In this document: positions 4,853-56,269 of the stretch, piece after piece | How the letters are laid out: each line of letters begins with the position of its first letter | Numbering within the stretch: the stretch's first letter is position 1 | Source: Sphaerodactylus townsendi | Lineage: Eukaryota | Length of the DNA: 64,000 nucleotides | Reading direction: 5' to 3' | NCBI RefSeq assembly: GCF_021028975.2 | Contig: NC_059439.1 | Location: forward strand, 23,932,001 to 23,996,000 | Made by a program: the position numbers and the translations under genes | Notes under the pieces: model-generated | What the model saw: only the letters and a program-made list of their open reading frames with translations | Database searches by the model: none | Told to the model about the DNA's origin: nothing

Positions 4853-4968
4853 TGTTCTGGTTTTATTTAGGTCTGAAGATTGTTTTTTTTTTTTAAATAT
4901 ATGCAGACTTATGTTAAGGATTGCCTTGTTCTTCATTGTTCAATTCTGGCAGTGTATACACTGGAGAC

Positions 4969-5892
4969 ATGGAGCAGAAGAACAGTTCTGAGGTGTCTGA
5001 ATTCCTTCTTCTAGGACTCTCCCAAGTTAAAAAAGTCCAGCTTATTCTATTCCTTATTTTTGTACTCTTCTACTCTCTGATCTTGCCTGGAAACATCCTT
5101 ATTATTCTAACTATTTGGAGGGATCGCCAGCTGTGTTCCCCAATGTACTTTTTCCTTGCCAGTCTGGCCTTCCTTGACATCTGTTACAGTTCCGTCACAC
5201 CACCAAAGATGCTGGCCGACTTCCTCAGCCAACACAAAACCATCTCTTATGGGGGATGCATGTGCCAGCTCTTTTTCTTGCATTTCTTGGGAGCAGCTGA
5301 GATGTTCCTACTGATAGCTATGGCTTATGACAGGTATGTGGCCATATGTCGACCCCTGCAGTACATGTCCCTTGTAAACAGAGGTATGTGCTGCATCTTG
5401 GTGGGGGCATCATGGGCTGGAGGATTTGTTCATGCTATAATCCTGGTTAGTTTGACCCACCAGCTCCCCTTTTGTGGACCCAATATCTTGGACAACTTCT
5501 TCTGCGATGTTTATCAAGTCATCAGGTTGGCCTGTACTGATACACACAGAGTGGAAGTCCTGACTTTCATCAATAATGGGCTCATAATATTAACAGGCTT
5601 TATACTTTTGCTCATTTCATACGCTATCCTTTTGATCAGGTTAAGACTTAGTGTAACACATGGGAAGAGTAAAGCCTCCTACACCTGTGTCACGCACATC
5701 ATTGTCGTTTTTGTGATGTTCACCCCGGCCATCTACCTCTATACACGCCCTTCAGAGCCTTTACCCTTGGATAAGGTGGTTGCTGTCTTCCACACTGTGG
5801 TCTTCCCTTTATTAAACCCAGTGATTTACACAATGAGGAATAAAGAAATTAAGAGTTCCATGAAGAAGTTAATCAAAAGATACAATTTCTAA
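4969..5892 (+). CDS. Olfactory receptor, class II, family 4 (OR4M/OR4N-like), intact, 307 aa
   Basis: Single-exon ORF from ATG 4969 (MEQKNSSEVSEFLLLGL, N-glycosylation site NSS). OR motifs GN, SPMYFFL, MAYDRYVAICRPLQY, FCGPN..DNFFCD, KASYTC..H, PLLNPVIYTMRNKEIK. A polypyrimidine+AG acceptor near 4952 suggests a non-coding upstream exon. Confidence 0.95.
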   Translation: MEQKNSSEVSEFLLLGLSQVKKVQLILFLIFVLFYSLILPGNILIILTIWRDRQLCSPMYFFLASLAFLDICYSSVTPPKMLADFLSQHKTISYGGCMCQLFFLHFLGAAEMFLLIAMAYDRYVAICRPLQYMSLVNRGMCCILVGASWAGGFVHAIILVSLTHQLPFCGPNILDNFFCDVYQVIRLACTDTHRVEVLTFINNGLIILTGFILLLISYAILLIRLRLSVTHGKSKASYTCVTHIIVVFVMFTPAIYLYTRPSEPLPLDKVVAVFHTVVFPLLNPVIYTMRNKEIKSSMKKLIKRYNF

Positions 5893-6188
5893 ATGATGGA
5901 GGGGGAAAAACATGCACAATCAGAAGGGGTAAAAGGGGGCTCAAATATGTGCAAATGAATATAACAGGAATGTTGGAATACATGACAGAAATTAAATTTT
6001 AAAATAATTTTACATGTTTTCATAGATGCTGTAACCAGATCATCATCTAAAAAACACATCTCCAGAAGTGTTAAAATAAAAAGGTTATTTTTTTTGTATT
6101 GTAAGGATTTGTGCTGCAGGTAGATTCAAATCACCCCGTCTTTGTTATTATTTTGAAAATATCTCTCTTATACTGTGTTTGGCCTGGT

Positions 6189-6243
6189 GGTTCGTTCGTT
6201 CGTTCGTTCGTTCCCTCCCTCCCTCCCTCCCTCCCTCCCTCCC
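6189..6243. repeat. Compound microsatellite (GTTC)n(CCCT)n
   Basis: Direct inspection. Confidence 0.9.
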
Positions 6244-9022
6244 TTTTCAGCCAATCTGGTGGTTAATACTTCCACTGTGCCTGAAAGTGCATTTCAGGAA
6301 AATTTAGGATCAATCTAGATAATCTTTGCTCCTTTTCTTGAACATTTGTTCCCCCTTCATTACATTGTCATAAAAACAGCCATTCTGTGGTCACCACTGG
6401 GAAATCCTTCTGATCAGTGATAAGTATACTGAAATCCTTTGCTATGATTACCTCTTTTAAATCTTCCATGCTGAACTTTCACTAACAAATACTGCCCCAA
6501 TAATCAATCCACATGTAAAAGTCCAAACAGTTTGAAAAAACTGAACATTTTTTCTGTCCAGTGTGAGCAGTTAGTTTGAGCTTCTGCATTTGGATGTCTC
6601 TGCATTTAGTTATTTGTGTTTTAGACTCTTGTTTTTGTTTGATTCAATTTGTTATTGTGCTTTTCACCTCCACTATGTAGGTAACCAGGGGCGTGGTGAG
6701 AGGGATGAGGAGGCTCTTTACCGGGTCCCAATTGCCTGGGGGGGGGGGGGGCTAGCTGCTGCCCTCTCCCACTGCCCTGCAAAAAAATCTTTCTGTGTCC
6801 TTAAAAATAATATTTTCATTCAAGTTGAGTGTGCCAAGGCAAGTTCAGCAAGACAGTGGGAGGGAAGACAAAGTCAAGGAAGGAACATGACCTCCCTGGT
6901 CTTGTCTCCACCCCCAGTGTCTTACCGGTCTTGCCTCAGCACCACTCAGAGGAAAGTAAGATGGATTAATCCAGTTTACTCCTCTCCGTCTGAGCAAGGT
7001 TGGCAAGACACTGGGGGTGCCGACAAAGCCAGGGAAGAAACGTAACCTGTGGGTGGCATTTTTTTTAAAGCAACATCCCTGTAGGCAACTTTCCATTTCT
7101 ATATCTTGATCAAGATCTGGTTATCAACAATAACTCTTAGGCAGATATTTCATCTTGATTATTCCTTGAAGTTAATGAAGCGGACCAGATTTACCTGGGT
7201 CGCCATTGCCACCAGGGGAAGGGCGCCACGTTGCCTTCCTTCCCCTTTTCCAGCAGGCTGCTGCATCGCTGCACTGCTCTGCACAGGCGCCGGACAGCAC
7301 AGCCCATTGGCTGTGGAGGGCTGGCCGGGACGCGTGGTTATGACACCAGACCCCGTTGCTGCCCACCACCTTTAAAGCCAGGGCGGGCCACGTGTAGGCC
7401 CTCTTTGCCTGGCTGCCATCTGATCAACCCACCCAACCTCCCTGTATTTCTTTGTTGAGTTTTTTTCTAGTTGTTAAATAGTGTTGTTGCGGTTTGCGCA
7501 TGGGGGACTGATCCTTGGCCAGGTTAGCTGCCTGCTAACCATTTTGGGAACCTCCTTACGAGGTTTGGGGTGAAGCAAGCCAGGACTCATAACGCCCAGG
7601 CATGGGCTGAGCTGGCTTGCGCCCCACAGTAATTGGGGGAAATTTTCAGGCAGCGGTCCACCACCCATCTGATATTTCCCCCTCATTGCTGCCAGGTATC
7701 GGTTTGTGTTTCATTTCCTCAAACCGGCGGGTTTGAGGAATCCCGGGTTGGGAGACAGCCTTTTGGGCTGCCCAACACAAGGATCAGACCCCATGCTGCG
7801 CCTTACGCTCGCTATTCTGTCAAGCCAATAAATTCATGGCAATGGCCATTTTTTATTCCACAAATAAAGTGTTTGTCTTTTGCTATCTTGTTTGGTTCAA
7901 ACAGCAAGCTCTCTCTCCCTCTGGTGGCAATGTAGTTCCTCTAGGATTCTGCTGTGCAAGGTGATCAATATATCTAATAACATGGTCCTCTGTACAGATA
8001 TGTAAACCCCTGGACTGGGGCCATGCAGAGAGAGAAAAAAGATTTTATTCTGGGGAATCCCCCCAGGTTCGCATAAGAATATGATAAACCAAGGAGTGTT
8101 ATCCATCAGCGAAGTGGCATCCACGCACAATGTTCCACGCAGCAGATGGAGAGGAAGCGGCTGTCACCACTTAGCCAGAAAGGCTGCAATGCTGCAGGTG
8201 GTTATGGGAAGGGTGAAGGCAGGAGCCTCACTTTCCCCCCACTGCTTTCCACAGAGTGACATGAAGAGAACAGGCAAGTGTTTGTGGTGGGCAGCCATAG
8301 GAGTGGGAAAGAGAAACTTTTGGGGAAAACCTAGAACTGACATAGAATAGCTCTAAGGATTGTTAGAGACTTTACGGTATCACCAAAGAGTTCCCAGTGA
8401 TTTCTAGAGGTACGCTATCTTATTCCAAGTTTTCCCTGAAAATGACATTATGGCATACACAACATTGCATCTGCCCTTGTCCTCACCCTTCTAAGTGCCT
8501 GCTGATAGTTTTCATCTAGGGTATTACATAAGATTTGCAGTTACCGTAACATAAGCAAAATAACAAAGTGTTCAACATGTGTTGGCCTTCTTTCTCAGGC
8601 ACCATGCTGAGATATGGGTTGGCCAAAATTTCCCCTTTACCAGCTCCAATATATTTTCTTTTCCTTTCTGGAAAGTGAGGTTGGAGAAGGACGATAAATG
8701 CAGACACAATGCGTCCTCCACCCGCACTCTCCATGGAGGGTTAGATGTCACTCTGGAAACTGAATAGGGATGTCACCCTAATAGATATTTGTTTTATTAT
8801 GTTTTTTATGTTGTTTGAATGTATTTAATCCACTGTAAACTTCCTTGAGAAGTTTAAAATAAAGTATCGACATTTTAAATAACTAAATGAATAAAAATAA
8901 TCTGACTGCAAGAATGGATTAGGTGTCAGCACAATTGCTTTTTTGAAGTGTTTTATCAATGTGCACTCACATTGGTAAGGGGAATTGGCAAGTTAACAAA
9001 AGGAAGCTGCACTAGACAAGGG

Positions 9023-9614
9023 AAGAAGAGAAGAAGAGTTTGGATTATATCACACCGTTCTCTCCTGTAAGGAGATTCAAAGCAATTTACAAACACTTTC
9101 CCCTTCCTCTCCCCACAACAAGAAGAAGAAGAGTTAGGATTTATATCCCCCTTTCAATCCTGCAGGAGACTCAAAGGGGCTTACAATCTCCTTGCCCTTG
9201 CCCCCTCACAACAAACACCCTGTGAGGTAGGTGGGGCTGAGAGAGCTCCAAGAAGCTGTGAATAGCCCAAGGTCATCCAGCTGGCGTGTGTGGGAGTCTA
9301 CAGGCTAATCTGAATTCGCCAGATAAGCCTCCACAGCTCAGGCGGCAGAGCTGGGAATCAAACCCGGTTCCTCCAGATTAGACACACGAGCTCTTAACCT
9401 CCTACGCCACTGCTGCTCCTGTGAGGTAGATGGGGATGAGAGAATTCCAAAGAACTGCAAGTAGCCCAAGGTCACCCAGCAGGGACGTAGGAGCGGGGAA
9501 ACAAACCCAGTTCAACAGATTTGAGTCCACTGGTCTTGTGAAGGAGAGGGGAATCAAACCCAGTTCTCCAGATTGGAGTCTACCTGCTCTTAACAACTAC
9601 ACCACACTGGCTCC
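9023..9614 (-). mobile_element. Older SINE (9023-9120 + 9420-9614) interrupted by a young SINE (9121-9419)
   Basis: Two reverse-complement SINE tails and heads. The outer element resumes (tgtgaggtaga) right after the inner head ends (...tgctgctcc). Confidence 0.85.
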
Positions 9615-11608
9615 AGGGTTGCCTTGCAGTTCATTTCTACAGCAAAACTTCCGCAATATTTCTATGACAGTAATAAAGATTGATTGATATGTTTGGATCT
9701 TTATCATATGCTAGATTACCTCAGCGATAGCTCTACGTAAGCCTGGGCACAAAGAGAAGTTTTGCCGTCCCAGGAATGTTTCAAGTGGGATGCTGCACAG
9801 TGTACACTGTCTCTCTTCTTGCCTTAACTGAATGTTCCAAGCACAAAACATACAAGGAACAATATAATCAATGATTCTGGGGGGTGGAGTCTGTAGGCAA
9901 GCAACTGCCTACGGTTAAGTTGACTGATACCTTTTTAACAGGCTAGATCCCGGCTGCGAGATAAATTTCAGAAGGCCAAATACGGGTCTTAACTTGGTAA
10001 CAAAATAGGACCCACTCATTGGCTTACAGTAAAGAAAAAAATGTTGTGTGCATTCATTAATTAAACTGGTTTGACAACTCATACAGATGAATGGGTTCCA
10101 AACTGTTCACCCTGAGCAAGAATGAGGATGAAGTTCAGGATCGTGAATTCAGTTTAAACAACCTAGGAAAAGTCCTAGGAAAAGACCAAGGACCTGCAAC
10201 TCATGGGCTATGTGTAGGAGGCCCTGTGTTTGATCTTATGTCTCTAATTAAGAAGCAGGGCTGATTGAAGGGCATTTATACATTTTCCAGGGCAAGATGG
10301 TAACCGAATCTCCTGTGACAGCTTCCATGTTATGTTAGGAATATATTCATCTTCAGCCCATATGGGATGGCAGTGTTGCATGTTTTTCTGAAGTGCTGCA
10401 TTTGGAATGAGACCATAGTAGAATGGAACAGCACACTGTGGATGAAGAATGTGTCCACAATTTCCACTGAAAGATCTCAAATATGTGGGGAAGACTACTT
10501 CCTGAGATACTGTTCAGGGTGTTGGGACCATCTACCTTTTCTGCTGGTGAAGAAGGTCCCTTTGACCACCTTAGCAGACCCTACTGAGGTTCCTGGACCT
10601 GCAGGGACAAAAGCCATGTGGGATTGGCAGTTTAATGCAAGAAATTGAGTAACATTTTGATCCAAGAAAAAGAAGCTGGCTGTATCCAACCCATTGAAGA
10701 GAAAGCGGGTTGTGTGGGCTTGTTGTCTTACTCAAAAGAAGGCCCTTTCATGTCTTTCTATAATAAGATGATGATAACACCATCTACTGTCCCTGATGTA
10801 TGCTACCAGGGTTTTATGTAAGCATGCACTTTGTAAGGGTGAGAGACTTACGTTATCACCAAAGTGGCAAAAGAGCTGACACAGATGCAGTGGAGAACCC
10901 CACCGCACCTTGTGATTTATGTAGATTATTTGTCACCTCTGATATGATAGAGCTGCTTTTGCGAGTGTCAAGAAGAACAAGGGCCCCTTCAAAAAGAAAC
11001 AGAAGTAGGAATGAGCTACCATCAGGCCATCCATTCTATTGGAGGTACCCACAATTTGTATGTTTCTTTATGCAGATTGTTGCATATACTATTTCTGGTA
11101 CATGGGTCAAAATACAGCAGTTTTTCTGCAAGGAGATCTCCTTTGGACAAGATCTCCTTTGGCCAATCAGAAGGTACTTTGGATTGACTCATGGGAAGGA
11201 AAGAGACTTAGCATTTCACTGTCCCCCTTCCCCTTTGGAATTTTAAATCAGGATCCTCCACTATGAGGATTTACAAGAAGATTTGTTTGTTTCATTGGAT
11301 ATCACATCTGTTTTGGTCCTGAGAAAAAGATGTTAGATAGTATTCTGTTACTGTTATCAGGGTGGTTAGATTTATTTTTGGAATCTGAGTGGGCCAAGTT
11401 CCCAGCAAGCACGTTAGCCTTAGGCTGTTAAAGGCTGGAACTATCTTTATTCTGTGGCAACCATCAGACCTCCTTCTTTTGTACCTTGTATATTTCACGT
11501 GGGGAACAGGGAATTAAGATAAGNNNNNNNNNNNNNNNNNNNNNNNNNNNNNNNNNNNNNNNNNNNNNNNNNNNNNNNNNNNNNNNNNNNNNNNNNNNNN
11601 NNNNNNNN

Positions 11609-12315
11609 AACAGTCATCTTCTGGTGGTCCCTGGGCCAAAGGAAATCCAGCCAGCTTCAATCAGGGCCAGGGCATTCTCAGCTCTGGCCCCAGTCTGGTG
11701 GAATGCTCTGTCTAATGAGACCAGGACTATGCAGGATCTTATGAAATTCTGCAGGACCTGCAAGACAGAGCTGTTCCACCAGGCACATGGTTGAGGCAGT
11801 GATGGTACTATCTGGCCTCCCCTTTCCCATCAAGTCCACCTTCAACCTTCAATGGATCTGTTTACTGTTTTAGCACCAGTGGCGTAGGAGGTTAAGAGCT
11901 CCTGTATCTAATCTGGAGGAACCGGGTTTGATTCCCAGCTCTGCCGCCTGAGCTGTGGAGGCTTATCTGGGGAATTCAGATTAGCCTGTACATTCCCATA
12001 CACGCCAGCTGGGTGACCTTGGGCTAGTCACAGCTCTTCTGAGCTCTCTCAGCCCCACCCGCCTCACAGGGTGTTTGTTGTGAGGGGGGAAGGGCAAGGA
12101 GATTGTAAACCCCTTTGAGTCTCCTGCAGGAGAGAAAGGGGGGATATAAATCCAAACTCTTCTTCTTCTTCTTTACAGACATCTTGTAGGGAACAATAAA
12201 TGTAACTTAATGCAATGTTTTTTTTATATTTTAATTATTTTAAATTGTTATGTGGAATGCTGTGAACCAAGGTGAAGAGTGGCATATTAAATCTATTAAA
12301 TAAAAATAAATACAT
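11609..12315 (+). mobile_element. L2 LINE 3' end with a young SINE (11872-12172) inserted in its 3' UTR
   Basis: RAFSALAPVWWNAL...CKTELFHQA is an L2 ORF2 terminus. The AT-rich UTR with an (AATA)n-like tail resumes after the SINE. Confidence 0.75.
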
Positions 12316-12606
12316 AAATTTAAAATGTAACCAAAATGAGAAAATAGGCAGAATGAAAATGGTCTTTCCTTGAGAAGGTTTTGAACTAAATTAAATTCAC
12401 ATATTCATACATTCTTAACACCAGTAAGTAATTCTTATAAGCTTCAGATTGTGTTATTGTCCATAGTAGAAAGAGAACATGGAACTTTGACCTCCGTAAT
12501 ACAATCTTACAGGCGTCAGAACCTTTTTGCGCACATCTCCACTATACTTTCAGTGATTCATTATTCATTAGGTCTTCTCAAAAGGTCTCCGGCATCCAAG
12601 TCCTAC

Positions 12607-12834
12607 CTGATTAAACCAGCTGTGCCATACAATGAGTTCCTCTCTAATGGTGAGCGCTTGGGGTGAAGGAGTCCGGGGATCCATTTTGCCAACATTCACT
12701 CTAACAAAAGATTGATTAGGGAATGTGACCCAGTTGATAACATCAAATCCTGCTTCTAATTTTCCATCCCGGTCAAAGGAAATCTTGTCTCCAGCACTGT
12801 TGTTAAATGAGACCTGTCTCAGAAAGTGGTGGAG
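12607..12834 (-). CDS. V2R-A exon 4
   Basis: 228 bp; LHHFLRQVSFNNSAGDKISFD...FDVINWVTFPNQS...WFNQ; AG/GT flanks. Confidence 0.92.
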
Positions 12835-12957
12835 CTAGATCGAGAAAAGGAACATAGGTTTGTAACAAACAATAAAAGCTCACTTTTTTTCCAAAAAACA
12901 CCATCTTTGTACAGCTAAAGTGATTGGCATATTTGCCACTGACAGTGTTATCATTTT

Positions 12958-13050
12958 GGTTATATGTAAACAAGAGAGTTCATGGTTATATGTAAACAAG
13001 AGAGTTCATGGTTATATGTAAACAAGAGAGTTATATGTAAACAAGAGAGT
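12958..13050. repeat. 26-bp tandem repeat, ~3.5 copies
   Basis: ggttatatgtaaacaagagagttcat repeated. Confidence 0.9.
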
Positions 13051-13171
13051 CCATTTCCCTGCTTGCTCATTTCTATGCACATAGAAAAGGTAGGACTCAT
13101 ACAAGTGATCTGACAAAAATTCATAATACAGTAGTTGAAAAAAAAACAAATCTTAGTGACTTGTGGAAAGA

Positions 13172-13412
13172 CAGCTTGGGGTAGTTGGTTAGGAGTAGTG
13201 GACTCTAATCTGGAGAATGGGCTTTGTTTCCCTGCTCCTCCACATGAAGCTTTCTGGGTGGCCTTGGTCCTGTTACAGTTCTCTCAGAACTCTCTCAGCC
13301 CCACCTACCTCACAAGGTGTCTGTTGTGGGAAGGGGAAGGGAAGGATTGTAAGCTGCTTTGAGACTCCCTGAAGTTAGAGATAAAGTGGGGCTTAAAAAC
13401 CATCTCTTCTTC
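13172..13412 (+). mobile_element. Older tRNA/CORE-type SINE
   Basis: Diverged match to the SINE family (tctaatctggaga...ctctctcagccccacctacctcac). Confidence 0.75.
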
Positions 13413-13574
13413 CAATACTTGCATTCAATTCAGGGTGCATATTTTAGCCCAATCCTTTTTGATCCCACCTGAACCAGAGAAAAAAAAATAGCCCCTCTCA
13501 TTTATGTATCGCCTCTCCACGTACCATGGATTCCCTCCCCACACAATCTCACAATGAACTGTTCAAACAACTAC

Positions 13575-16760: not shown

Positions 16761-16836
16761 TGGTGGTAATCGAATATAGAGAGTTATAGATGTTAACAGA
16801 ATATAGATGTTAACAGAAGCAATTGTAATTCCTTAC

Positions 16837-17042
16837 AGAAAATCTTCAGACAATGACTGAGAAGGCTGTTTACTGAAGTCATTCGGACTGCTGTGGAAGA
16901 TGGTATGGGAAGCAACGCTTCCAACGATGACATCTCCTGACTGATAATATTTGTGAACAGTAGGCGGGGGATTCAAGAGACTACATGCCTCAGCAGGAGC
17001 CGTACGCACAATGGAAAGCTGCAGCACTCCCAGTATCCACAT
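16837..17042 (-). CDS. V2R-A exon 1 (signal peptide)
   Basis: MWILGVLQLSIV...C...KYYQSGDVIVGSVAS; phase-2 donor gtaagg. Confidence 0.85.
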
Positions 17043-17389
17043 CTTGAATGAAACTGTTCCCTCCGGACATAGAATCCCTTATCTGCATCCGCAACACTAT
17101 GACTCGGATGTTCATGCATTTAGTTTCAGCCTATTTATTCATTGAGTTTCAGCTTGTTCATTCATTTAGTTTCAGATATTCATTTGTTGCTGGGTTTACT
17201 AGCCATCAGTCCAGAAAGAAAGAAAACAGCCATTTCTGGCCTGACCCTAGAGTATCAAACGCACAGGATCAAATACCTGACTGCCTCTGGTCCTTCATCA
17301 TACTTCTGAATTTTATGAGGATACATTCAAATATATTTTAGCTTAATTATTATCCTCTAGCACACCACAGGGGATACAGCAAGTCTCAG

Positions 17390-17412
17390 AATTACTATCC
17401 TTTGGATAATTA
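17390..17412 (-). promoter_or_regulatory. Shared V2R upstream motif, copy A
   Basis: Sense strand TAATTA-TCC-AAAGGA-TAG-TAATT, ~350 bp upstream of the ATG; equivalent motif at B, C and D. Confidence 0.6.
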
Positions 17413-18089
17413 TGGGGGAATAAATCTTTTACACTTGGTTGTCATGTCTCCCCTTTAACTGAAAAGTGGTAAATTTCAAAAGGAAAAGAACTCTAGCCAT
17501 TAAAATCCTCAGATGACTGTCAGCAGAAATAAACATTTTGATTCATAGTATCAGTCTCCCTGAGAAATTTTCCCCCTGTGGAAGTAAAAAAAAAAACCCA
17601 CTCTTTTCCTTGTGTGTTTCATGCCTTCATATTGGCTCCTCACTTACCGGCCCCACAAAAATACCTGGGTTTACATCCCTCAACCCCCAACAAGGTCTAA
17701 CCTCCCCCTGGCTCTAGATCCAAATCTGGATGGATTTTTAATGATCTGCCAACCACAGACGGATGTACCACCCTCTGTACCCCATTCCCATTGTCCCACC
17801 TCTGGAGACAGTGAACACAAAAACCTTTAAAGAATAATAAACTTTATTGCAAAATTATGATGTTAAAAACAGACCTTAACTACAAGCACTGAAGATTTCA
17901 AAGATGTCAAAAGCAAATCATGGGTACATTTTATCCGGGACAAACAGCAAACAACACAAAGTTTTCAAATGTTCAATGTATTGTCGAAGATTTTCAAATG
18001 TTGTATTATGAATAAATAGAAATTTAACAAAAACCCATAAGTATTCCAAAGATTACAACATTATAATTCTTCAGCAAGGATTTTAATCA

Positions 18090-27690: not shown

Positions 27691-28879
27691 CTAGAATGGG
27701 GTGAAATAATGACATTACAAAATTTTATAGAGATAGGTGGTACAGAGAACTGGTTGGTTTTGAGAGGAATATGGGAAAGAATAAAGGTGTCAAGAATTAA
27801 AGGTGAATGTATAATGGCAAATTGCTTGGAAATCTATGAAAAAAGGGGCAGGAAAGTTTTAGGTCAAATATATAATTTGATGATTGATGATAAGGAATTC
27901 ATGATAAGAGCTATGAAGCAAAAATGGGAGAAGGATGGCACCCTGAATGATGAAAAAACTGAAAGAATAATGGCTAGCATGAGAAAAATAAAAATTGAAA
28001 AATATATGGAGTTGGAAAGACAGTTGATTTTAAAATGATATAGAACTCCCAGACAACTTGCATATATGGTAAAGGGATTATCTCCAAAATGTGGGCACTG
28101 TGGAGACCAAGATGCACATTATAGCCATATGTGGATTGAATGCAAAGAAGTAAAAAGATTCTGGGAAAAGGCATTGCTATGGATAGAGAAATTGGTGAAA
28201 AATAAAGTGGAATTAAGAAATGATCTATTATTTATGGGAATAATTGATGATGAAAAAATAGATATACAATATAGAAATATGTATTAAACATTGATTAGAG
28301 CAATACATGCAGTGATAGCGTTTGGATGGAAAGATAAGAAAAAATGGATGATTTCAGAAATGGTTGGAATATATATGGGAACAAGTAACATTAGACATTT
28401 TTGAAATATTATCAAAGAATAAAACATGGCAAGAAAAACAGAATGAAATAATGAAGATATGGACAAGTTATGAGAATTGGATGAAGGAGACGGGAGTCAA
28501 AGAAGACATATGGATGAGAATGAACTTACTGCTGTTTGGTTAAAGAAAAGAAAAACATAATATTAGGGGAGGGTGGGAGGGGGAAAAAGGGAAAATGTAT
28601 TGTTTGGAAATATATCAGAAAGATGTAAATAGAATGATTATTTCAAACTATACAATAAAAATATATATTTTTAAAAGAGACTGTAGACTGTGTTGTGATA
28701 TTTTGTATAAATGATCTGCCCCAGAGCTCTCTAGATTATGCCTACTTTGTCTAGATACCAGTTCCCTCTCGAGCCTTGGGTGGTATCATTATTATTAGCA
28801 GATCTTGATCCCAAAACAGCCTGAGTTGTTGATAAACATCTGACAATAGTAATCTCTGTAAAACGTTGTTGGTTTATGA

Positions 28880-29704
28880 CAGGGGTCGGGAACCTTTTCC
28901 CCTCAAAGAGCCATTTGGCTCACTCACCCCCCACTCGCTGGCACGCCCCCCCTCCGCTCCCCCGCCCACTTGCTCGCTCGCGCCCCCCCTCCGCCCGCTC
29001 ACACACACACACCCGCCTGCAGGGCAGGCGTAGATAGGCCCGGCGGCTCGGCCTTGCCGGCTGCCGGGCGAGTGATGCGCCCGCCCTGCTCCTTACAGGG
29101 CGGGTGAAGAGGTGCCCGGCGGCTCGGCCGGGCCGGCCGCCGGGGAAACGATGCTCCCGCCCTGCTCCTTGCAGGGCGGGAGAAGAGGTGCCCGGCGGCT
29201 CGGCCGGGCCGGCCGCCGGGGAAACGATGCTCCCGCCCTGCTCCTTGCAGGGCGGGAGAAGAGGTGCCCGGCCGGGCCGGCCGCCGGGGAAACGATGCTC
29301 CCGCCCTGCTCCTTGCAGGGCGGGAGAAGAGGTGCCCGGCCGGGCCGGCCGCCGGGGAAACGATGCTCCCGCCCTGCTCCTTGCAGGGCGGGAGAAGAGG
29401 TGCCCGGCCGGGCCGGCCGCCGGGGTAACGATGCTCCCGCCCTGCTCCTTGCAGGGCGGGAGAAGAGGTGCCCGGCGGCTCGGCCGGGCCGGCCGCCGGG
29501 GAAACGATGCTCCCGCCCTGCTCCTTGCAGGGCGGGAGAAGAGGTGCCCGGCGGCTCGGCCGGGCCGGCCGCTGGGGGAACGATGCGCCCGCCCTGCTTC
29601 TCGCAGGGCGGGAGAAGAGGGGCCCCGCGGCTCGGCTGATGGAGCCGCAGAACAGCGGCGGAAGAGCCGCATGCGGCTCGCGAGCCGCGGGTTCCCGACC
29701 CCTG
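28880..29704. mobile_element. Young hAT non-autonomous element with an internal 68/76-bp GC-rich minisatellite
   Basis: TIR caggggtcgggaacc; 8-bp TSD gtttatga; ~8 tandem units. Confidence 0.92.
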
Positions 29705-31645: not shown

Positions 31646-32067
31646 AAATATATCAGCCCTATCAACATGAATATTACTGCATAGTCTGTCAATTCATTTT
31701 TATAGTATATTGTATAATATTAAAAACAGAGCTGCAGATATAGAAATCAGGGAGAAACTTTCTATAACATTTAAGAGGGGGTTCTTTCCTTGCTCATTTT
31801 ATTTCATTCCAGAATGGCTTATTATTTCCCTTGTGGAGGGGGGTCTTTCTTTGAGAATTTTGCCAGGTCTAGTAACTCTTTGTACACCAATTGAATGACA
31901 GCCCAATCCAGGTGGGGGGATGATTGGTCACAGACGCCTTCCTTCACCATGCTGCCACCAGTCATCACAGTGTTGTCCAGAGATCTGGATTACAATGTAA
32001 GACATCCTTGGAATGGATAACTTACTTGACCAATAAAGAAAGAAATGATGTAGATTTAATTGCTTAC

Positions 32068-32282
32068 ACAAACTCATCAGACAGTGGTGGGGGTGGATTT
32101 CTTGTGAAGTCTACTGAAGTGGATACAATGAAAGTGTGAGAAGCAATGCCACCAACAAAGACATCTCCTGATTTGCGATATTCCTGGAGTGGAGGCTGTG
32201 GATATTTCATCCAGCATTGAATAATGTGAGAATTGGAAACCATTCCAGGAAGTAGGAAAAGCAACAAATCCATAAATATCAT
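32068..32282 (-). CDS. V2R-B exon 1 (signal peptide)
   Basis: MIFMDLLLFLLPGMVS...C...EYRKSGDVFVGGIAS; phase-2 donor gtaagc. Confidence 0.88.
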
Positions 32283-32587
32283 AAACCTGCACACACTTGT
32301 TTCTCTATTAATACAATGTACTATTTGGATCCATAATGCCATCCTTATAATCAGTATGACTAAATCACCTTAACACAAAGAATTTCCCAATAGGCCTCTG
32401 CTAAGTAGCATTAAGAAGACAAAGGACAAACATCAATCTATCGGAGAGCAGGAGAGTGATTCATTCTCCATCTGTAATCCTTAGATCTATGGTTTCAGAT
32501 CTTTGGTTATATTTACACTGTCCTTTCTTCCAAACGGTTGCTTGATGATGAGTGGATCCCCAGTGGTGATTTGAAAAGCAGCAGAGA

Positions 32588-32611
32588 TAATTACAGTGCT
32601 TTTGATAATTA
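32588..32611 (-). promoter_or_regulatory. Shared V2R upstream motif, copy B
   Basis: Sense strand TAATTA-TCA-AAAGCA-CTG-TAATTA, ~305 bp upstream of ATG 32282. Confidence 0.6.
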
Positions 32612-33258: not shown

Positions 33259-34243
33259 TTTTTCTCCTTGGTTTTACTTGTGACCAGCTCCACATGCTCT
33301 CCTCCAGGAAGATCCTCCATTGCATTAAGGATATTTTACCAGGAATATCAACTTTTAATTGTAAAGCTCTGGAGTATTTTTCAAGGGCAGTCCCATGTAG
33401 AGTACATTTCAATAATATAATCTATCTGTAAGCAGTACATGCATCCCAGGGGACAGACCTTTTCTGCCCAAGAAAAGCTGTAGCTGCCTAACTAGTCAAA
33501 GTTGGTAAAAGGCACTCCTGGCAACAGCTCCTACTAGCTTATCTAGCACTAGGTCTAAGTCTAAGAGTTCCCCAAAACTATGGACCTGTTCCTTCAAGAG
33601 GAATGCAGCCTCATCCAGAATGGGTGGCAACCTTAAGTCCCAAGCCAGATCTTGCATTCACCATATAGAATTTCCATCTTGTTGAGATGAAGCTTCAGTT
33701 TATTAGCCTGCACTCACTCCAAAACTGCCTCCGGTCATCAGTTCAGTATTTTTATCACCTCTTTGGGATTGACAGGAAGTGTGTGTTAGAGCTAAGTGTC
33801 ATATGCATACTGGTGACAACCCAGCCCAAATCTCTGGAGAACCTCACAAAGCAGTTTCCTGTAAATGCTGAAAAGCATATGGTACAAGATGGAGCTTTGT
33901 GGGATTTCAAGGTTTTCTCCTCTCAGTCTTTTTCTTCAATGTTTACAAGAGGTCACTGAATGAGATTTTCTTGAACTTTAGGGTTGGGTATCATCCATAT
34001 GCAGATGATACATAACTCTGCATAGCCAGTCCATTTCATTTTCTAGGGCTTTTAGTATTGCATAGACTGCAGGCATTGGGGGGGGAGGGACTTTAGGTCT
34101 TATGTTGTTGGTTCTAAATTGTGTTCTTTCTAACTGTGGTTCGTAAATTGCCTTGAGCCATGTAGAAAGGTAGGATGTAAATAGACATGTTTTGCTCTGC
34201 AATTCCATTGGGAATCTCCAACTTTGGCCATTACCTTCCCCTT

Positions 34244-34266
34244 TAATAATTAAAGGACCTTAATTT
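34244..34266 (+). promoter_or_regulatory. Shared V2R upstream motif, copy C
   Basis: TAATAA-TT-AAAGGA-CCT-TAATTT (1 nt shorter than the others), ~240 bp upstream of the ATG. Confidence 0.5.
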
Positions 34267-34506
34267 AATTTGAGTTTCGACAAAATCTCGACGGACTTTC
34301 AAGGTATTCATATAAAACTAATAACAGGGATGGTGAAAGTTGGTACCACTATAGCTACCACTAAGACCAGAAACTACAAGCAGACTAGAGCTGTATCAGT
34401 CTGATCCCCAAGTTACATTTAAAAATACAGGCTTTGCGTCCTTCAGTAGAGAGAATGTTAATGTGGTGACAAAAGCCTGTATTTATAGGGAAGAAGTACA
34501 TTTAGG

Positions 34507-34721
34507 ATGAAGGGATTTGTCTTCTTACAGCTGGTAATGGTATATCACAGAGTATTTAAGGCTCATATTGTGAAGTGTGGGATTCGAGACCTAGATCCTC
34601 CTCTCCAAGAGTATCACCAGTCAGGAGACTTCTTTGTTGGTGGTATTGCTTCTCAGAGTTTCAACATCAATCCTGTCAGCTTCACTGAATACCCCAAAAC
34701 GGCGCTGGCTGATGAGCTTTT
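34507..34721 (+). CDS. V2R-C exon 1 (signal peptide)
   Basis: MKGFVFLQLVMV...C...EYHQSGDFFVGGIAS; phase-2 donor gtaagc. Confidence 0.9.
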
Positions 34722-35226
34722 GTAAGCATTAATTATCTTTTACGTTAATTTTTTCCTTTACATTTCTTCTCCCTGAGTGTTTAATTCCAGCCACAATGGT
34801 CCGTTAACTAAAAATTAATCAAATTTCAGTGAGCTTTACTGGTGTTCTTGAGTTCTTGTGTACACTCCTATGTCCATTTCTGATCTGATTTCCATTTACC
34901 TCCCTTCTTGTTAGCACGGAAGTACACATGAACCTGCCTTATATCAAGTCAGTACTTCATCTAATACAGTGTTGTAATCTCTTTCTGGCAGCAGCTTCCA
35001 ATGAGCTACAGCAGGGAATGATCTTTCACAATACTGGTTCTTCATGAACTTAAGTGGGTGTACTAGACATGGAACATCAGACTCCCTAGATGCAAAGAAA
35101 GTCCTCTGCAGCTAAGGCACAAGACATTCCTCTAAACTTTCCACAGTCTAGAATAGATGGTGTTTTCTACCATCTGTAAATTAACTATGAACAATTGTTC
35201 TTCTGCATGCACGCCTAGCAAATTTG

Positions 35227-52900: not shown

Positions 52901-53454
52901 TCAGTCCACATTTGAAGCTTGGTAGTGCTCCAGGAAGCTTCTGTTAAGAGAAAATAAATGAACCTAATTTGAAAATCTAGGACTTGAATTTTTAGCCACT
53001 CTGACAGGCATTCCTTAAGATATATTCCATTCTTCTTGATGCCATTTGTCATATGCCTTTCCCATGCCTCAGCCTCTATTTAGGTAATACTACCTCAGTT
53101 CTACTTCCTCCTGTCAGTCAACATCTTAGATGAACTAGAACTAGAACTTAGATGAACTAGAACATCTTAGAACTAGCTGATCTGAATCCAAGAGCAGTTG
53201 CTGTTTCCCAGGCCTTGGCCATTGTTCTCCAGATATGAAAGATGTAGCTGGCATTCCAGTGACTGGCAGTCCAGCATTCCAGTGAGGGACCAAATGGTTT
53301 GTCCAGGCAGATCCTTTTCCTGTAGGCAACACAGTACAGGGCTGGAGATGGCATCCATTTTAACCTGCATTGCCAGAGTACCTTTATGGAGGACTGGCGG
53401 AGCACTGCTTCCCTATCATATCACCGGTCGGTATGGTAACAGTATGACCATATT

Positions 53455-53853
53455 CAATTCAATTTCAATTTATTACAGTCAAAGACCAGCAAATTACAGC
53501 CAGGGACCGACAAATTCTATACAGCAAATTACAGTCAAGGATCAACAAATTCTATGCACACTCTCAACCTTGTAATTCCCAGTGTAATTGCAATATCTAA
53601 ACTACCCTAAAATCAACACTGAGGCCTAATTTGTTTCACTTGTCCCAAACATACGGTAACTTAGCGTTAAAATACATCCAGTTCATAACTTAGCGTTAAA
53701 ATACATCCAATCCATAACTTAGCATTAAAATTAATCCATTCCATAACTTAGCATTCAAATGAGTCACTCTAGTTAAAATTGTTCATATATGCGTGGGCTT
53801 GCCTACTTATTGTCTTTCGGCCTATCTGCACTCCCATTTGTTCAATCCTAGAT
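53455..53853 (-). mobile_element. LINE 3' UTR fragment with internal ~29-bp subrepeats
   Basis: Homologous to 40935-41190; repeated taacttagc.ttaaaat units; 13-bp TSD gtatgaccatatt. Confidence 0.7.
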
Positions 53854-54036
53854 GTATGACCATATTTGAATATCATGCTTTTTACACATTTCAAAACAAA
53901 GCTTTTTTCCTATAGACAACCCAACACAGGGCTGGAGATGGCATCCATTTTAATTGATTTAATCATACTTTTACACAGTTCAAAACAACACTTCTTTATC
54001 AAAATTCAACCGACAGTTGTGAAGTTGGGTCCTCTG

Positions 54037-54060
54037 TAATTACCAAAAGGACCATAATTA
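54037..54060 (+). promoter_or_regulatory. Shared V2R upstream motif, copy D
   Basis: TAATTA-CCA-AAAGGA-CCA-TAATTA, ~355 bp upstream of the ATG; TATA-like ctataaat at 54364. Confidence 0.6.
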
Positions 54061-54415
54061 ATTCTCTTGCTTCCCAAATTCTCTGTGGAGAACAAGCAGC
54101 CAGGAGCAGAACTGGTTAGGACAACAGTGGCAGGTGACAAATATTCCTGTTTGTTTCAGAACTAGCAACAGGCAGAGGCCCACTAGGATGATCGATGCTA
54201 CTTTATATTAAACTCCTGACTTCAATCGTATCAGTGCTAGACTGATCCCTGGTCAGGGCAATGGAATCATGGAAACTAATGATTATCTTCTTGTAAAAAT
54301 AGATGGCACAAACTGAACAATAAAAAGTGCTAGCATTACAGCACCACCATAGTAGCAGTTCTCCTATAAATGCAACTCTGGGAGCCCATTATCAGCAACA
54401 AAGTTTGCAACTAGG

Positions 54416-54633
54416 ATGCTGATCTTAGTGATGCTGGTGTTACTGTTTTTCAGTCGTGTTGTGGGAAAGGTTCATGTTTCTCAATGCGCTGCTGTGGATA
54501 GCTCCCCCATTCGTCGCATGTATCTTCAGCCAGGAGATCTTATCATTGGTGCCATTATATCTCAGACACTTTTTGTCACCAGTCCGAAAGACTTCACGTG
54601 CCAATCACATGGGATGCCTTCTGAATCGTTTGT
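54416..54633 (+). CDS. V2R-D exon 1 (signal peptide)
   Basis: MLILVMLVLLFFSRVVG...C...YLQPGDLIIGAIIS; phase-2 donor gtatgt. Confidence 0.88.
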
Positions 54634-56269
54634 GTATGTAACTTAAGACTTTTTTGTTATACCTTGTGCACACTTTATACTTTCTACCTGAATAATCATA
54701 TAGGTTATCGTCGCATGTTTTCGTTTCCATTCCTAGAGATTGTGTCAGACCCAGATCTGCATCACCATTACATACAGAGACATCTCAAAAGGGAAAGGAT
54801 GTCAGAGGCAACCACAAGACTTTCTCTGATAGAAGAAGTTGCTCATGACCATAGGCAACTGAGGAGTTCCTTGCTGTCATAGTTTGGTACCCAAGTATAT
54901 GGGGCTTAGAACATGAATGCTTAATGCTACCTTGAATAAATCAGACTCATCTGTCATGATCTGCCCATTAGATTATCTATGAAGATTATCTGCTTCATCC
55001 AATTTATTACATTAATATTAATGCTCTATTAATCAATATTGACAGAGTTCATGATGGATATGTTTAATTAATTCAATTGTCATTTGAATATACATAGATC
55101 GTTATCTTTGTATTTTTTAATATTGTCTTGTCTGGAAAAAACAATAAACTGTACAAAAACTGGTTTTAAATATTCCTTATCCTCTCCTTAACTTTTACTT
55201 AAATCATAAACTAAATGTTGCACTAAAAAAGTAGACTCATAGCCCTAAAAGATGGTAAAATGCAGAGCAGCTATTGAATCAGTTTTACAGATAAAGTGAC
55301 CAGCTAGTACTGTCTTGACACAGCATAGCACCAATGCCGGTCTTGAATCTAAAACAGTTGAATTGGGTAGAACTGTTTGTTGGATAAGAGTGGCTTAGTT
55401 TGCAGAAGTGTAAGATGAATAATATTTACTTAATATCAGAGAGCTGTATTGGAGAATGTTGTTCCTGGCTTTTGTTCTTTTTGATGAATATCCTAGTCCT
55501 TTCTTTGACATTTGTGAATCAGCCTGTTTTCTGAATTTGGGGATTCTGGCTTCATAACAACGGCATTTGTCCATGGTACACAGAACTGCATGTGTGGTGG
55601 CAACCCGTCCTCAGTCTCTTTGGAGAGGGTTGGATAGGTGGTTTGGGATATGTGTATGTTCAGGTTTGAATCTCAGAGTTTTCCTCTACCACTGGTTATT
55701 GGGCAAGCCATCTCCTCTCCCACTCTGCCCTATCGTTATTATAAGTGATTTGAGGTTCTGTTAGATGCCCCTTCTGTCTATGCGTATTTCACTTTTACAC
55801 ATAGTCTTTTCCCCACATCCTAGCCTTCTTACTGTGTCAGGAATTTTGTCTGTGCATGGTTAAATGACAACCAGTTTGGCTAAGGTCTATGAAATACTGG
55901 GTTTACCTTGGCAATTTTTTCCCAAGGAGCAGACATAAGCCAAGCTCGAGCTTTGCATTATAGTCTGGTTGAAGCAGGCTTCCCATCTCCTCATTCACTT
56001 GCCTTGGTCTGTCACATCCTACCTGAGAGGGTTTGAAAACTTTTAATTCTTTCCCTCCAAGTAAGTAGGGTTTCTTTTTACCTACTCTGAATTAGGCTTG
56101 AGTTACCATATATGCGGCTCTGTACCTTTCCTCATTCATAACATTCAGCCATCATCCATGTTTTTTGCCCTAGTCAAAAACTGGTCTATGTTTAGCAGTA
56201 TACATTACTTAAAAAGTTCTGTCACTTGTAAAAGAAATGTTGCTACTTTTTCCAAGAGCATGACATCTC

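What the first reader, a model, noticed from the sequence alone, without database searches (positions are those of the whole stretch)
54037..54060. Conserved 24-bp paired-homeodomain element upstream of all four V2R genes
Seen: on each gene's sense strand, 240-360 bp upstream of the ATG, lies TAATTA-N3-AAAG(G/C)A-N3-TAATT. A: TAATTATCCAAAGGATAGTAATT (17390-17412, -). B: TAATTATCAAAAGCACTGTAATTA (32588-32611, -). C: TAATAATTAAAGGACCTTAATTT (34244-34266, +, 1 nt shorter). D: TAATTACCAAAAGGACCATAATTA (+). Orientation follows the gene, spacing is fixed, the N3 spacers vary freely, and I could not align the flanks by eye, which is the pattern of a constrained footprint. Established: TAATTA is a homeodomain site, and such sites (bound by Lhx2) are core to OR promoters. 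Inference: this is a composite promoter code for squamate V2R expression or gene choice. I do not know whether it has been described.
Basis: partly seen in the sequence, partly recalled or inferred. Interest (0 to 1): 0.78.

Follow-up and report, generated by a model that had tools for sequence, protein, structure and literature searches.

The report
Conserved homeodomain element in V2R promoters
All four vomeronasal type-2 receptor genes in this gecko window carry the same 23-base element with two TAATTA-type sites 260-380 bases upstream of the start codon, and its core recurs at the same place in snake, monitor and agamid V2R genes, so it is an old, selected promoter element whose binding factor is still unknown.

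Summary
The pattern TAATTA-N3-AAAGSA-N3-TAATT occurs four times in 64 kb (0.1 expected). Each copy lies on the sense strand 264-379 bp upstream of one of the four V2R start codons. An unbiased best-block search of the four 600-bp upstream regions finds the same block (score 103; nulls about 81, maxima 91 and 97), and the flanks do not align.

Fifteen further squamate V2R 5' regions could be read, plus one from a marsupial. The left half (TAATTA-YC-MAA) recurs at -250 to -370, sense strand, in Protobothrops, Pogona, Varanus and Thamnophis. A diverged copy with the same spacing sits upstream of another V2R of this gecko. Eublepharis and Tiliqua genes and the possum gene lack it. Podarcis and Gekko genes have only degenerate traces.

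The element is therefore a selected promoter-proximal element of a large squamate V2R group. It is not universal, and it cannot specify individual receptors on its own. Binding by a Q50 homeodomain factor such as Lhx2 or Emx2 is inference. No RNA run holds the stretch, so the transcription start is unknown. I found no published V2R promoter motif. It is a new variant of the known homeodomain logic of olfactory receptor promoters.

The parts
17390..17418 (-). Element of V2R gene A: C-run (17414-17418) plus the 23-bp bipartite motif (17390-17412); 370 bp upstream of ATG 17042
32588..32611 (-). Element of V2R gene B; 329 bp upstream of ATG 32282
34243..34265 (+). Element of V2R gene C (2 mismatches in the left half, spacing kept); 264 bp upstream of ATG 34507
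54037..54060 (+). Element of V2R gene D (the finding's coordinates); 379 bp upstream of ATG 54416
16836..17042 (-). Gene A exon 1 (signal peptide; end approximate)
32067..32282 (-). Gene B exon 1 (end approximate)
34507..34722 (+). Gene C exon 1 (end approximate)
54416..54643 (+). Gene D exon 1 (end approximate)
34311..34317 (+). Candidate TATA box of gene C (TATAAAA), 68 bp after the motif start. Inference only. Weaker AAATAT-type counterparts lie at 17329-17339(-), 32507-32515(-) and 54138-54145(+)
   Evidence: read by eye; no transcript data

Best explanation
The block is a cis-regulatory DNA element of the proximal promoter of a large, old group of squamate V2R genes, kept by purifying selection. 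Its anatomy is a short C-run, a TAATTA core extended by YC-MAAAG, a variable 3-bp spacer and a second TAATT core 18 bp after the first. The most likely mechanism (inferred) is this: one or two Q50-type homeodomain proteins expressed in vomeronasal neurons (Lhx2 or Emx2 type, possibly bridged by a cofactor such as Ldb1) bind the two cores, and an unidentified partner reads the central CAAAG/AAAGGA. Together they make the promoter competent, or set its probability of being chosen, in V2R neurons, as homeodomain plus O/E sites do for olfactory receptor promoters. The transcription start probably lies about 100-150 bp downstream, after a TATA-like box.
For: Shown: 4 of 4 V2R genes carry it and there are no other copies in the window. 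De novo block search gives z of about 8 against shuffles and about 5.7 against genomic controls. Flanks do not align. The 11-mer YAATTAYCMAA gives 8 exact hits in 360 kb of nine other squamate loci, and 6 of them lie on the sense strand 249-369 bp upstream of a V2R ATG: Varanus L002 9719; Protobothrops L005 8968, 20996 and 34257; Thamnophis L007 20743; Pogona L009 9674. About 0.01 chance hits are expected in that target space, scaling. A 15-promoter alignment has its only consensus island over the element. A second V2R of this gecko (L010) keeps the spacing and the right core. Exact O/E sites lie 45-90 bp downstream of the element in 3 promoters, out of 13 such sites in 360 kb. From papers: Lhx2 and Emx2 are expressed in rattlesnake vomeronasal epithelium (PMC12400810), and Lhx2 and Emx2 bind olfactory homeodomain sites (PMC7804114).
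Against: No binding, accessibility or transcript data exist here, and no RNA run holds the stretch, so the start site and any factor are inferred. The element is absent from Eublepharis L001, Tiliqua L008 and possum L011, and only degenerate in Gekko L006 and Podarcis L003. The four window promoters have no exact O/E site. The first Y of the 11-mer was chosen after I had seen the Thamnophis site; with T at that position there are 5 promoter hits of 7. Degenerate homologues were aligned by eye. The sample is about 20 promoters.
Confidence: 0.7

Rival explanations
1. The block is transcribed (5' UTR or a non-coding first exon) and is conserved for an RNA-level function such as translation control or splicing.
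For: The start site is unknown. The element is strictly sense-oriented. Polypyrimidine-AG stretches occur between the element and the ATG in several genes (by eye).
Against: The four sites share no RNA structure: each has a different minimum-energy fold, with z-scores from -0.3 to -2.1. The conserved letters are palindromic TAATTA cores typical of DNA recognition. TATA-like boxes lie downstream of the element, not upstream of it.
Confidence: 0.1
2. The block is a leftover of common ancestry or gene conversion among paralogous promoters and has no function of its own.
For: All carriers are homologous genes. B and C share a weak 85-bp similarity around the motif. Close paralogous copies of promoter D exist in the genus.
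Against: The flanks are saturated while the block survives. The core is retained at the same place in gecko, viper, colubrid, agamid and varanid genes, lineages that by general knowledge split well over 100 million years ago. Gene conversion cannot act between species.
Confidence: 0.1
3. The matches are chance in AT-rich DNA, or part of a repeat or transposable element.
For: TAATTA is common in AT-rich DNA. The full pattern at 3 mismatches or fewer gives 9 hits against about 6 expected in other loci. A high-copy repeat ends 170 bp upstream of site D.
Against: 0.10 hits expected against 4 seen, each at a V2R 5' end. Random genomic controls never reach the observed block score. The depth over the motif is not repeat-like (bins from 53869 on).
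Confidence: 0.03

Closest known systems
Olfactory receptor promoters with homeodomain (Lhx2/Emx2) and O/E (Ebf) sites near the start site
   Same: A TAATTA-type core in a chemoreceptor promoter. Some squamate V2R promoters also carry an exact O/E site 45-90 bp downstream. The element is shared by many family members rather than being gene-specific.
   Different: Here two cores sit at a fixed 18-bp distance around a conserved CAAAG/AAAGGA centre. The four window promoters have no exact O/E site. The genes are V2Rs, expressed in a different neuron type. No binding has been shown.
Extended homeodomain sequence AACTTTTTAATGA of the H and P enhancers and the P3 promoter (quoted in PMC7804114), whose multimers raise OR choice frequency (D'Hulst 2016, cited in PMC5608512)
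   Same: Read on the opposite strand, the V2R left half is a T-run followed by a TAAT core, and two cores are phased about two helical turns apart.
   Different: Two extra bases separate the T-run from the TAAT core, so there is no gap-free match. The second half differs (TAATTA, not TAATGA).
Greek Island composite Lhx2/Ebf motif (PMC5608512)
   Same: Rigid motif grammar: fixed spacing with tolerated base changes. A pyrimidine run (TCCCC) abuts the homeodomain core.
   Different: No purine half of an Ebf site follows. The partner of the TAATTA core is CAAAG/AAAGGA plus a second TAATT. The element is promoter-proximal, not an intergenic enhancer.
Conserved V1R subfamily promoter regions (Lane 2002; Stewart and Lane 2007; Michaloski 2011, PMC3247230)
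   Same: Vomeronasal receptor paralogues share promoter sequence near their start sites.
   Different: V1R conservation is broad, limited to subfamilies, and its motifs are O/E-like and BTB-ZF-like. Here a short island survives between genes whose promoters are otherwise unalignable, and across squamate families.

Membership tests
OR-type chemoreceptor promoter (homeodomain + O/E near start site) | Homeodomain core (TAATTA/TAATNN) in the proximal promoter | tested here: met
   Two cores in each of the 4 window promoters; left core at -250 to -370 in four other squamate genera
OR-type chemoreceptor promoter (homeodomain + O/E near start site) | O/E (Ebf) site TCCCNNGGGA close to the homeodomain site | tested here: inconclusive
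   TCYCNNGGGA exact: none in the 4 window promoters (only 6-of-8 matches by eye). It lies 45-90 bp downstream of the element in 3 other squamate V2R promoters
OR-type chemoreceptor promoter (homeodomain + O/E near start site) | Sites within about 200-300 bp upstream of a mapped transcription start | not testable with these tools
   No RNA run holds the stretch; gene ranges in fetched loci are CDS-only
OR-type chemoreceptor promoter (homeodomain + O/E near start site) | Occupancy by Lhx2/Emx2 and Ebf | not testable with these tools
   Needs ChIP, DAP-seq or EMSA
Greek Island composite Lhx2/Ebf motif | Ebf site directly juxtaposed to the Lhx2 site at a rigid distance | tested here: not met
   Next to the TAATTA core lie YC-MAAAG on one side and a C-run with no purine half on the other
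Paired-class homeodomain dimer site (P2/P3: TAAT-N2-3-ATTA) | Two inverted TAAT cores separated by 2-3 bp | tested here: not met
   The cores start 18 bp apart, with 12 bp between them
Extended homeodomain site AACTTTTTAATGA (H/P elements, P3 promoter) | Gap-free match to the 13-mer | tested here: not met
   The reverse strand of the consensus needs a 2-nt insertion between the T-run and TAAT (compared by eye with the sequence quoted)
Phylogenetic footprint (selected non-coding element) | More conserved than its flanks among paralogues | tested here: met
Phylogenetic footprint (selected non-coding element) | Retained at the same position and orientation in distant species | tested here: met
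   absent or degenerate in some genes
TCF/LEF-type HMG site (WWCAAAG) as the central partner | Match to WWCAAAG in the centre | tested here: inconclusive
   ATCAAA is common, but the final G and the spacing vary. A perfect match occurs only in Podarcis L003; the others have one mismatch (by eye)

The most novel reading that the evidence does not exclude
The element is the V2R counterpart of the OR Lhx2/Ebf code. On this reading it is a rigid homeodomain-X-homeodomain module dating to the squamate ancestor that recruits a LIM-homeodomain/Ldb1-type complex. It would be required for, and its variants would tune, singular V2R choice in vomeronasal neurons, and orphan copies such as the one in the Thamnophis cluster would act as enhancers.
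Probability: 0.2. Interest if true: 0.8.

Novelty: new variant of a known kind. Interest (0 to 1): 0.58.

Why it matters
How vomeronasal receptor genes are selected is stated to be unknown (PMC11630819), and I found no described V2R promoter motif in the searchable literature. Squamates rely heavily on V2Rs. A short element with fixed position and fixed spacing, shared by gecko, snake, monitor and agamid V2R genes, gives a concrete sequence to mutate, to use as bait for factor identification, and to scan for when annotating V2R 5' ends and start sites. It also suggests that V2R and OR promoters share homeodomain-based logic.

Tried and rejected
1. RNA evidence for the start site: the single run search found only low-coverage DNA runs.
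2. Shallow footprinting with related species: at 88% likeness, paralogous contigs mix in. One orthologous contig (7 differences in 267 bp) has none in the motif. The listed differences inside 54037-54060 are a 1-nt loss in the A-run and one change in spacer 2. This is too little for a test, and 191 differences were not shown.
3. RNA hairpin idea: rejected.
4. The 13-mer TAATTAYCMAAAG also hits the duplicated 3' end of a Varanus 7TM exon, with the stop codon inside the match. That is a chance hit.
5. P0062 had no contig on record.
7. The script machine was lost, so exon-1 mapping in later loci used a degenerate DNA signature, the degenerate homologues were placed by eye, and no PWM scan or gene tree could be made.
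Only exon 6 of gene B was searched, by reference.
9. Reads were laid on an N-free stretch only.

Full report
WHAT IS IN THE WINDOW. The scan's own notes say the window comes from Townsend's dwarf gecko; I did not verify this. It holds one olfactory receptor gene (4921-5892, +) and four V2R genes. Pfam assigns ANF_receptor to the exon-3 ORFs of all four genes and 7tm_3 to the last-exon ORFs of B and C.
- Start codons and signal peptides lie at 17042(-) for A, 32282(-) for B, 34507(+) for C and 54416(+) for D.
- A degenerate exon-1 signature finds exactly these four.
- Its pattern with up to 2 mismatches matches only them, against 0.10 expected.
- All four lie on the gene's sense strand, 370, 329, 264 and 379 bp upstream of the ATG.

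IS IT MORE THAN CHANCE, GIVEN THE PATTERN WAS MADE FROM THESE SITES? I searched the four 600-bp upstream regions for the best gap-free block without using the pattern.
- For word lengths 12 to 28 the winner was always this block.
- At length 23 its sum-of-pairs score is 103. Dinucleotide shuffles give 80.6 +/- 2.8 (max 91), and quadruples of random window segments give 80.8 +/- 3.9 (max 97).
- Pairwise blastn of the upstream kilobases finds nothing else of note. Exon-1 coding DNA is only 64-71% identical.
The genes are therefore old paralogues with saturated promoters, in which this island alone survives.

OTHER V2R GENES. I searched exon 6 of gene B by reference against the protein representatives. 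I then fetched the genomic loci of eleven hits. Species names come from the sources. Reading the 5' regions gave the following.
- Protobothrops (L005): three tandem genes each carry the left half and centre, preceded by the same C-run, about 250 bp upstream of the ATG.
- Pogona (L009): the whole element with 3 mismatches at -255.
- Varanus (L002, L004): the left half at -369 in one gene, two cores with a 2-bp shorter gap at -337 in another, and partial versions in three more.
- Thamnophis (L007): one gene keeps the left half, and its neighbour keeps the right core at the exact spacing.
- A second S. townsendi V2R (L010): a diverged left core, the same spacing, an intact right core and the C-run, at -294.
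- Podarcis (L003) and Gekko (L006): only degenerate traces.
- Eublepharis (L001), Tiliqua (L008) and the possum (L011): nothing recognisable.
An alignment of 15 of these segments has its only consensus over the element: a C-run, TAATTA-TCAAAA, six weakly conserved bases in which only AC reaches a majority, then TAATT.

POSITION TEST.
- The 11-mer YAATTAYCMAA has 8 exact matches on both strands of the first nine loci (360 kb). Six lie on the sense strand 249-369 bp upstream of a V2R ATG.
- The other two are one duplicated sequence at the stop codon of a Varanus last exon.
- From the shuffle expectation in the window (0.73 per 64 kb), about 4 chance hits are expected overall, but only about 0.01 inside the 140-bp sense-strand target windows of the 16 readable promoters.
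- Counting the three Protobothrops copies as one event leaves four independent events.
- Caveat: the first position was set to Y after I had seen the Thamnophis site. With T at that position, 5 of 7 hits are at promoters.
- The 13-mer taken strictly from sites A, B and D hits the Protobothrops promoters exactly.

LIMITS OF GENERALITY.
- The full 23-bp pattern at 3 mismatches or fewer gives 9 hits in loci L001-L010 against about 6 expected. Three of them are at promoters.
- The deeply conserved part is therefore the left core with its YC-MAA(A) extension. The complete bipartite form is best kept in this window.
- One further copy, with a single mismatch and the C-run, lies on the opposite strand between two Thamnophis V2R genes with no exon 1 behind it. 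It shows that the full form exists in snakes. It remains unexplained.

NEIGHBOURING SIGNALS.
- Exact O/E sites (TCYCNNGGGA) lie 45-90 bp downstream of the element in two Varanus promoters and one Thamnophis promoter, out of 13 such sites in 360 kb.
- The four window promoters have only 6-of-8 approximations by eye and no exact site.
- TATA-like boxes lie about 65-150 bp downstream of the element in most promoters. The clearest are TATAAAA in gene C at 34311-34317 and TATAAAT in Pogona. These were read by eye and are inference.

TRANSCRIPTS AND RELATED GENOMES.
- No RNA run holds the stretch, so the start site is unknown.
- Mouse V2R transcript models add only about 350 nt of UTR in total to the coding sequence (PMC4154679). 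That fits a start site a few hundred bases at most from the ATG.
- Contigs of related geckos laid on 53400-55400 show a high-copy repeat up to about 53868 and paralogous copies of promoter D.
- The only differences listed inside the motif are in the A-run and in spacer 2. The data are too thin for a test.
- The four sites share no RNA fold.

LITERATURE.
- Searches for V2R promoter motifs found none. The 2011 promoter study covers V1R and OR genes.
- Lhx2 and Emx2 are among juvenile-biased factors in rattlesnake vomeronasal epithelium.
- OR enhancers and promoters use homeodomain and O/E sites, a rigid Lhx2/Ebf composite, and an extended homeodomain sequence whose phased multimers raise choice frequency.
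- The V2R element resembles these in logic but matches none of them base for base.

VERDICT.
- The element is best read as a selected promoter-proximal module of a large squamate V2R group, most likely bound by Q50 homeodomain factors plus an unknown partner at the centre (inferred, confidence 0.7 for the cis-regulatory reading).
- It is not universal among V2Rs, and by itself it cannot select one receptor.
- It is a new variant of the known homeodomain logic of chemoreceptor promoters.

LIMITATIONS. About 20 promoters were read. The degenerate homologues were aligned by eye after the script machine was lost. There is no gene tree, and there are no transcript or binding data.

Noticed in passing
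L007:7111-7133 (-), Thamnophis elegans: A near-perfect copy of the full bipartite element (1 mismatch, with the C-run) lies antisense in the 3.5-kb gap between two V2R genes. No V2R exon 1 is detectable behind it. It may be an orphan promoter relic or a distal element.
   Followed up: partly
window 5900-13560: Gene A has exons 1-3, but no 7TM exon was found. There is no ORF of 70 aa or more on the minus strand and no PIVKANN signature between the OR gene and exon 3. An 85-N gap lies at 11524-11608. Gene A may be truncated yet still keeps a perfect element.
   Followed up: partly
window 33444-33453: A perfect palindromic O/E (Ebf) site lies midway in the head-to-head B-C intergenic region, about 1.1 kb from each ATG. 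About 4 such sites are expected per window by chance.
   Followed up: no
window 53400-53868: A high-copy repeat (contig depth in the thousands in all four gecko runs) ends about 170 bp upstream of the element of gene D, so the unique promoter is short.
   Followed up: no
window 4921-5892 (+): An intact olfactory receptor gene (7tm_4) lies tail to tail with V2R gene A. OR genes also flank V2Rs in Gekko (L006) and in the second S. townsendi locus (L010).
   Followed up: no
L002:16365-17088 and 28379-29102, Varanus komodoensis: The last V2R exon and its 3' end recur 12,014 bp apart. The deposited 1056-aa protein fuses two tandem V2R genes.
   Followed up: no
L005:21185-21200; L009:9893-9909; window 32395-32430: Polypyrimidine-AG stretches lie 20-115 bp upstream of several V2R start codons. 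They could be acceptors for an unannotated non-coding first exon.
   Followed up: no
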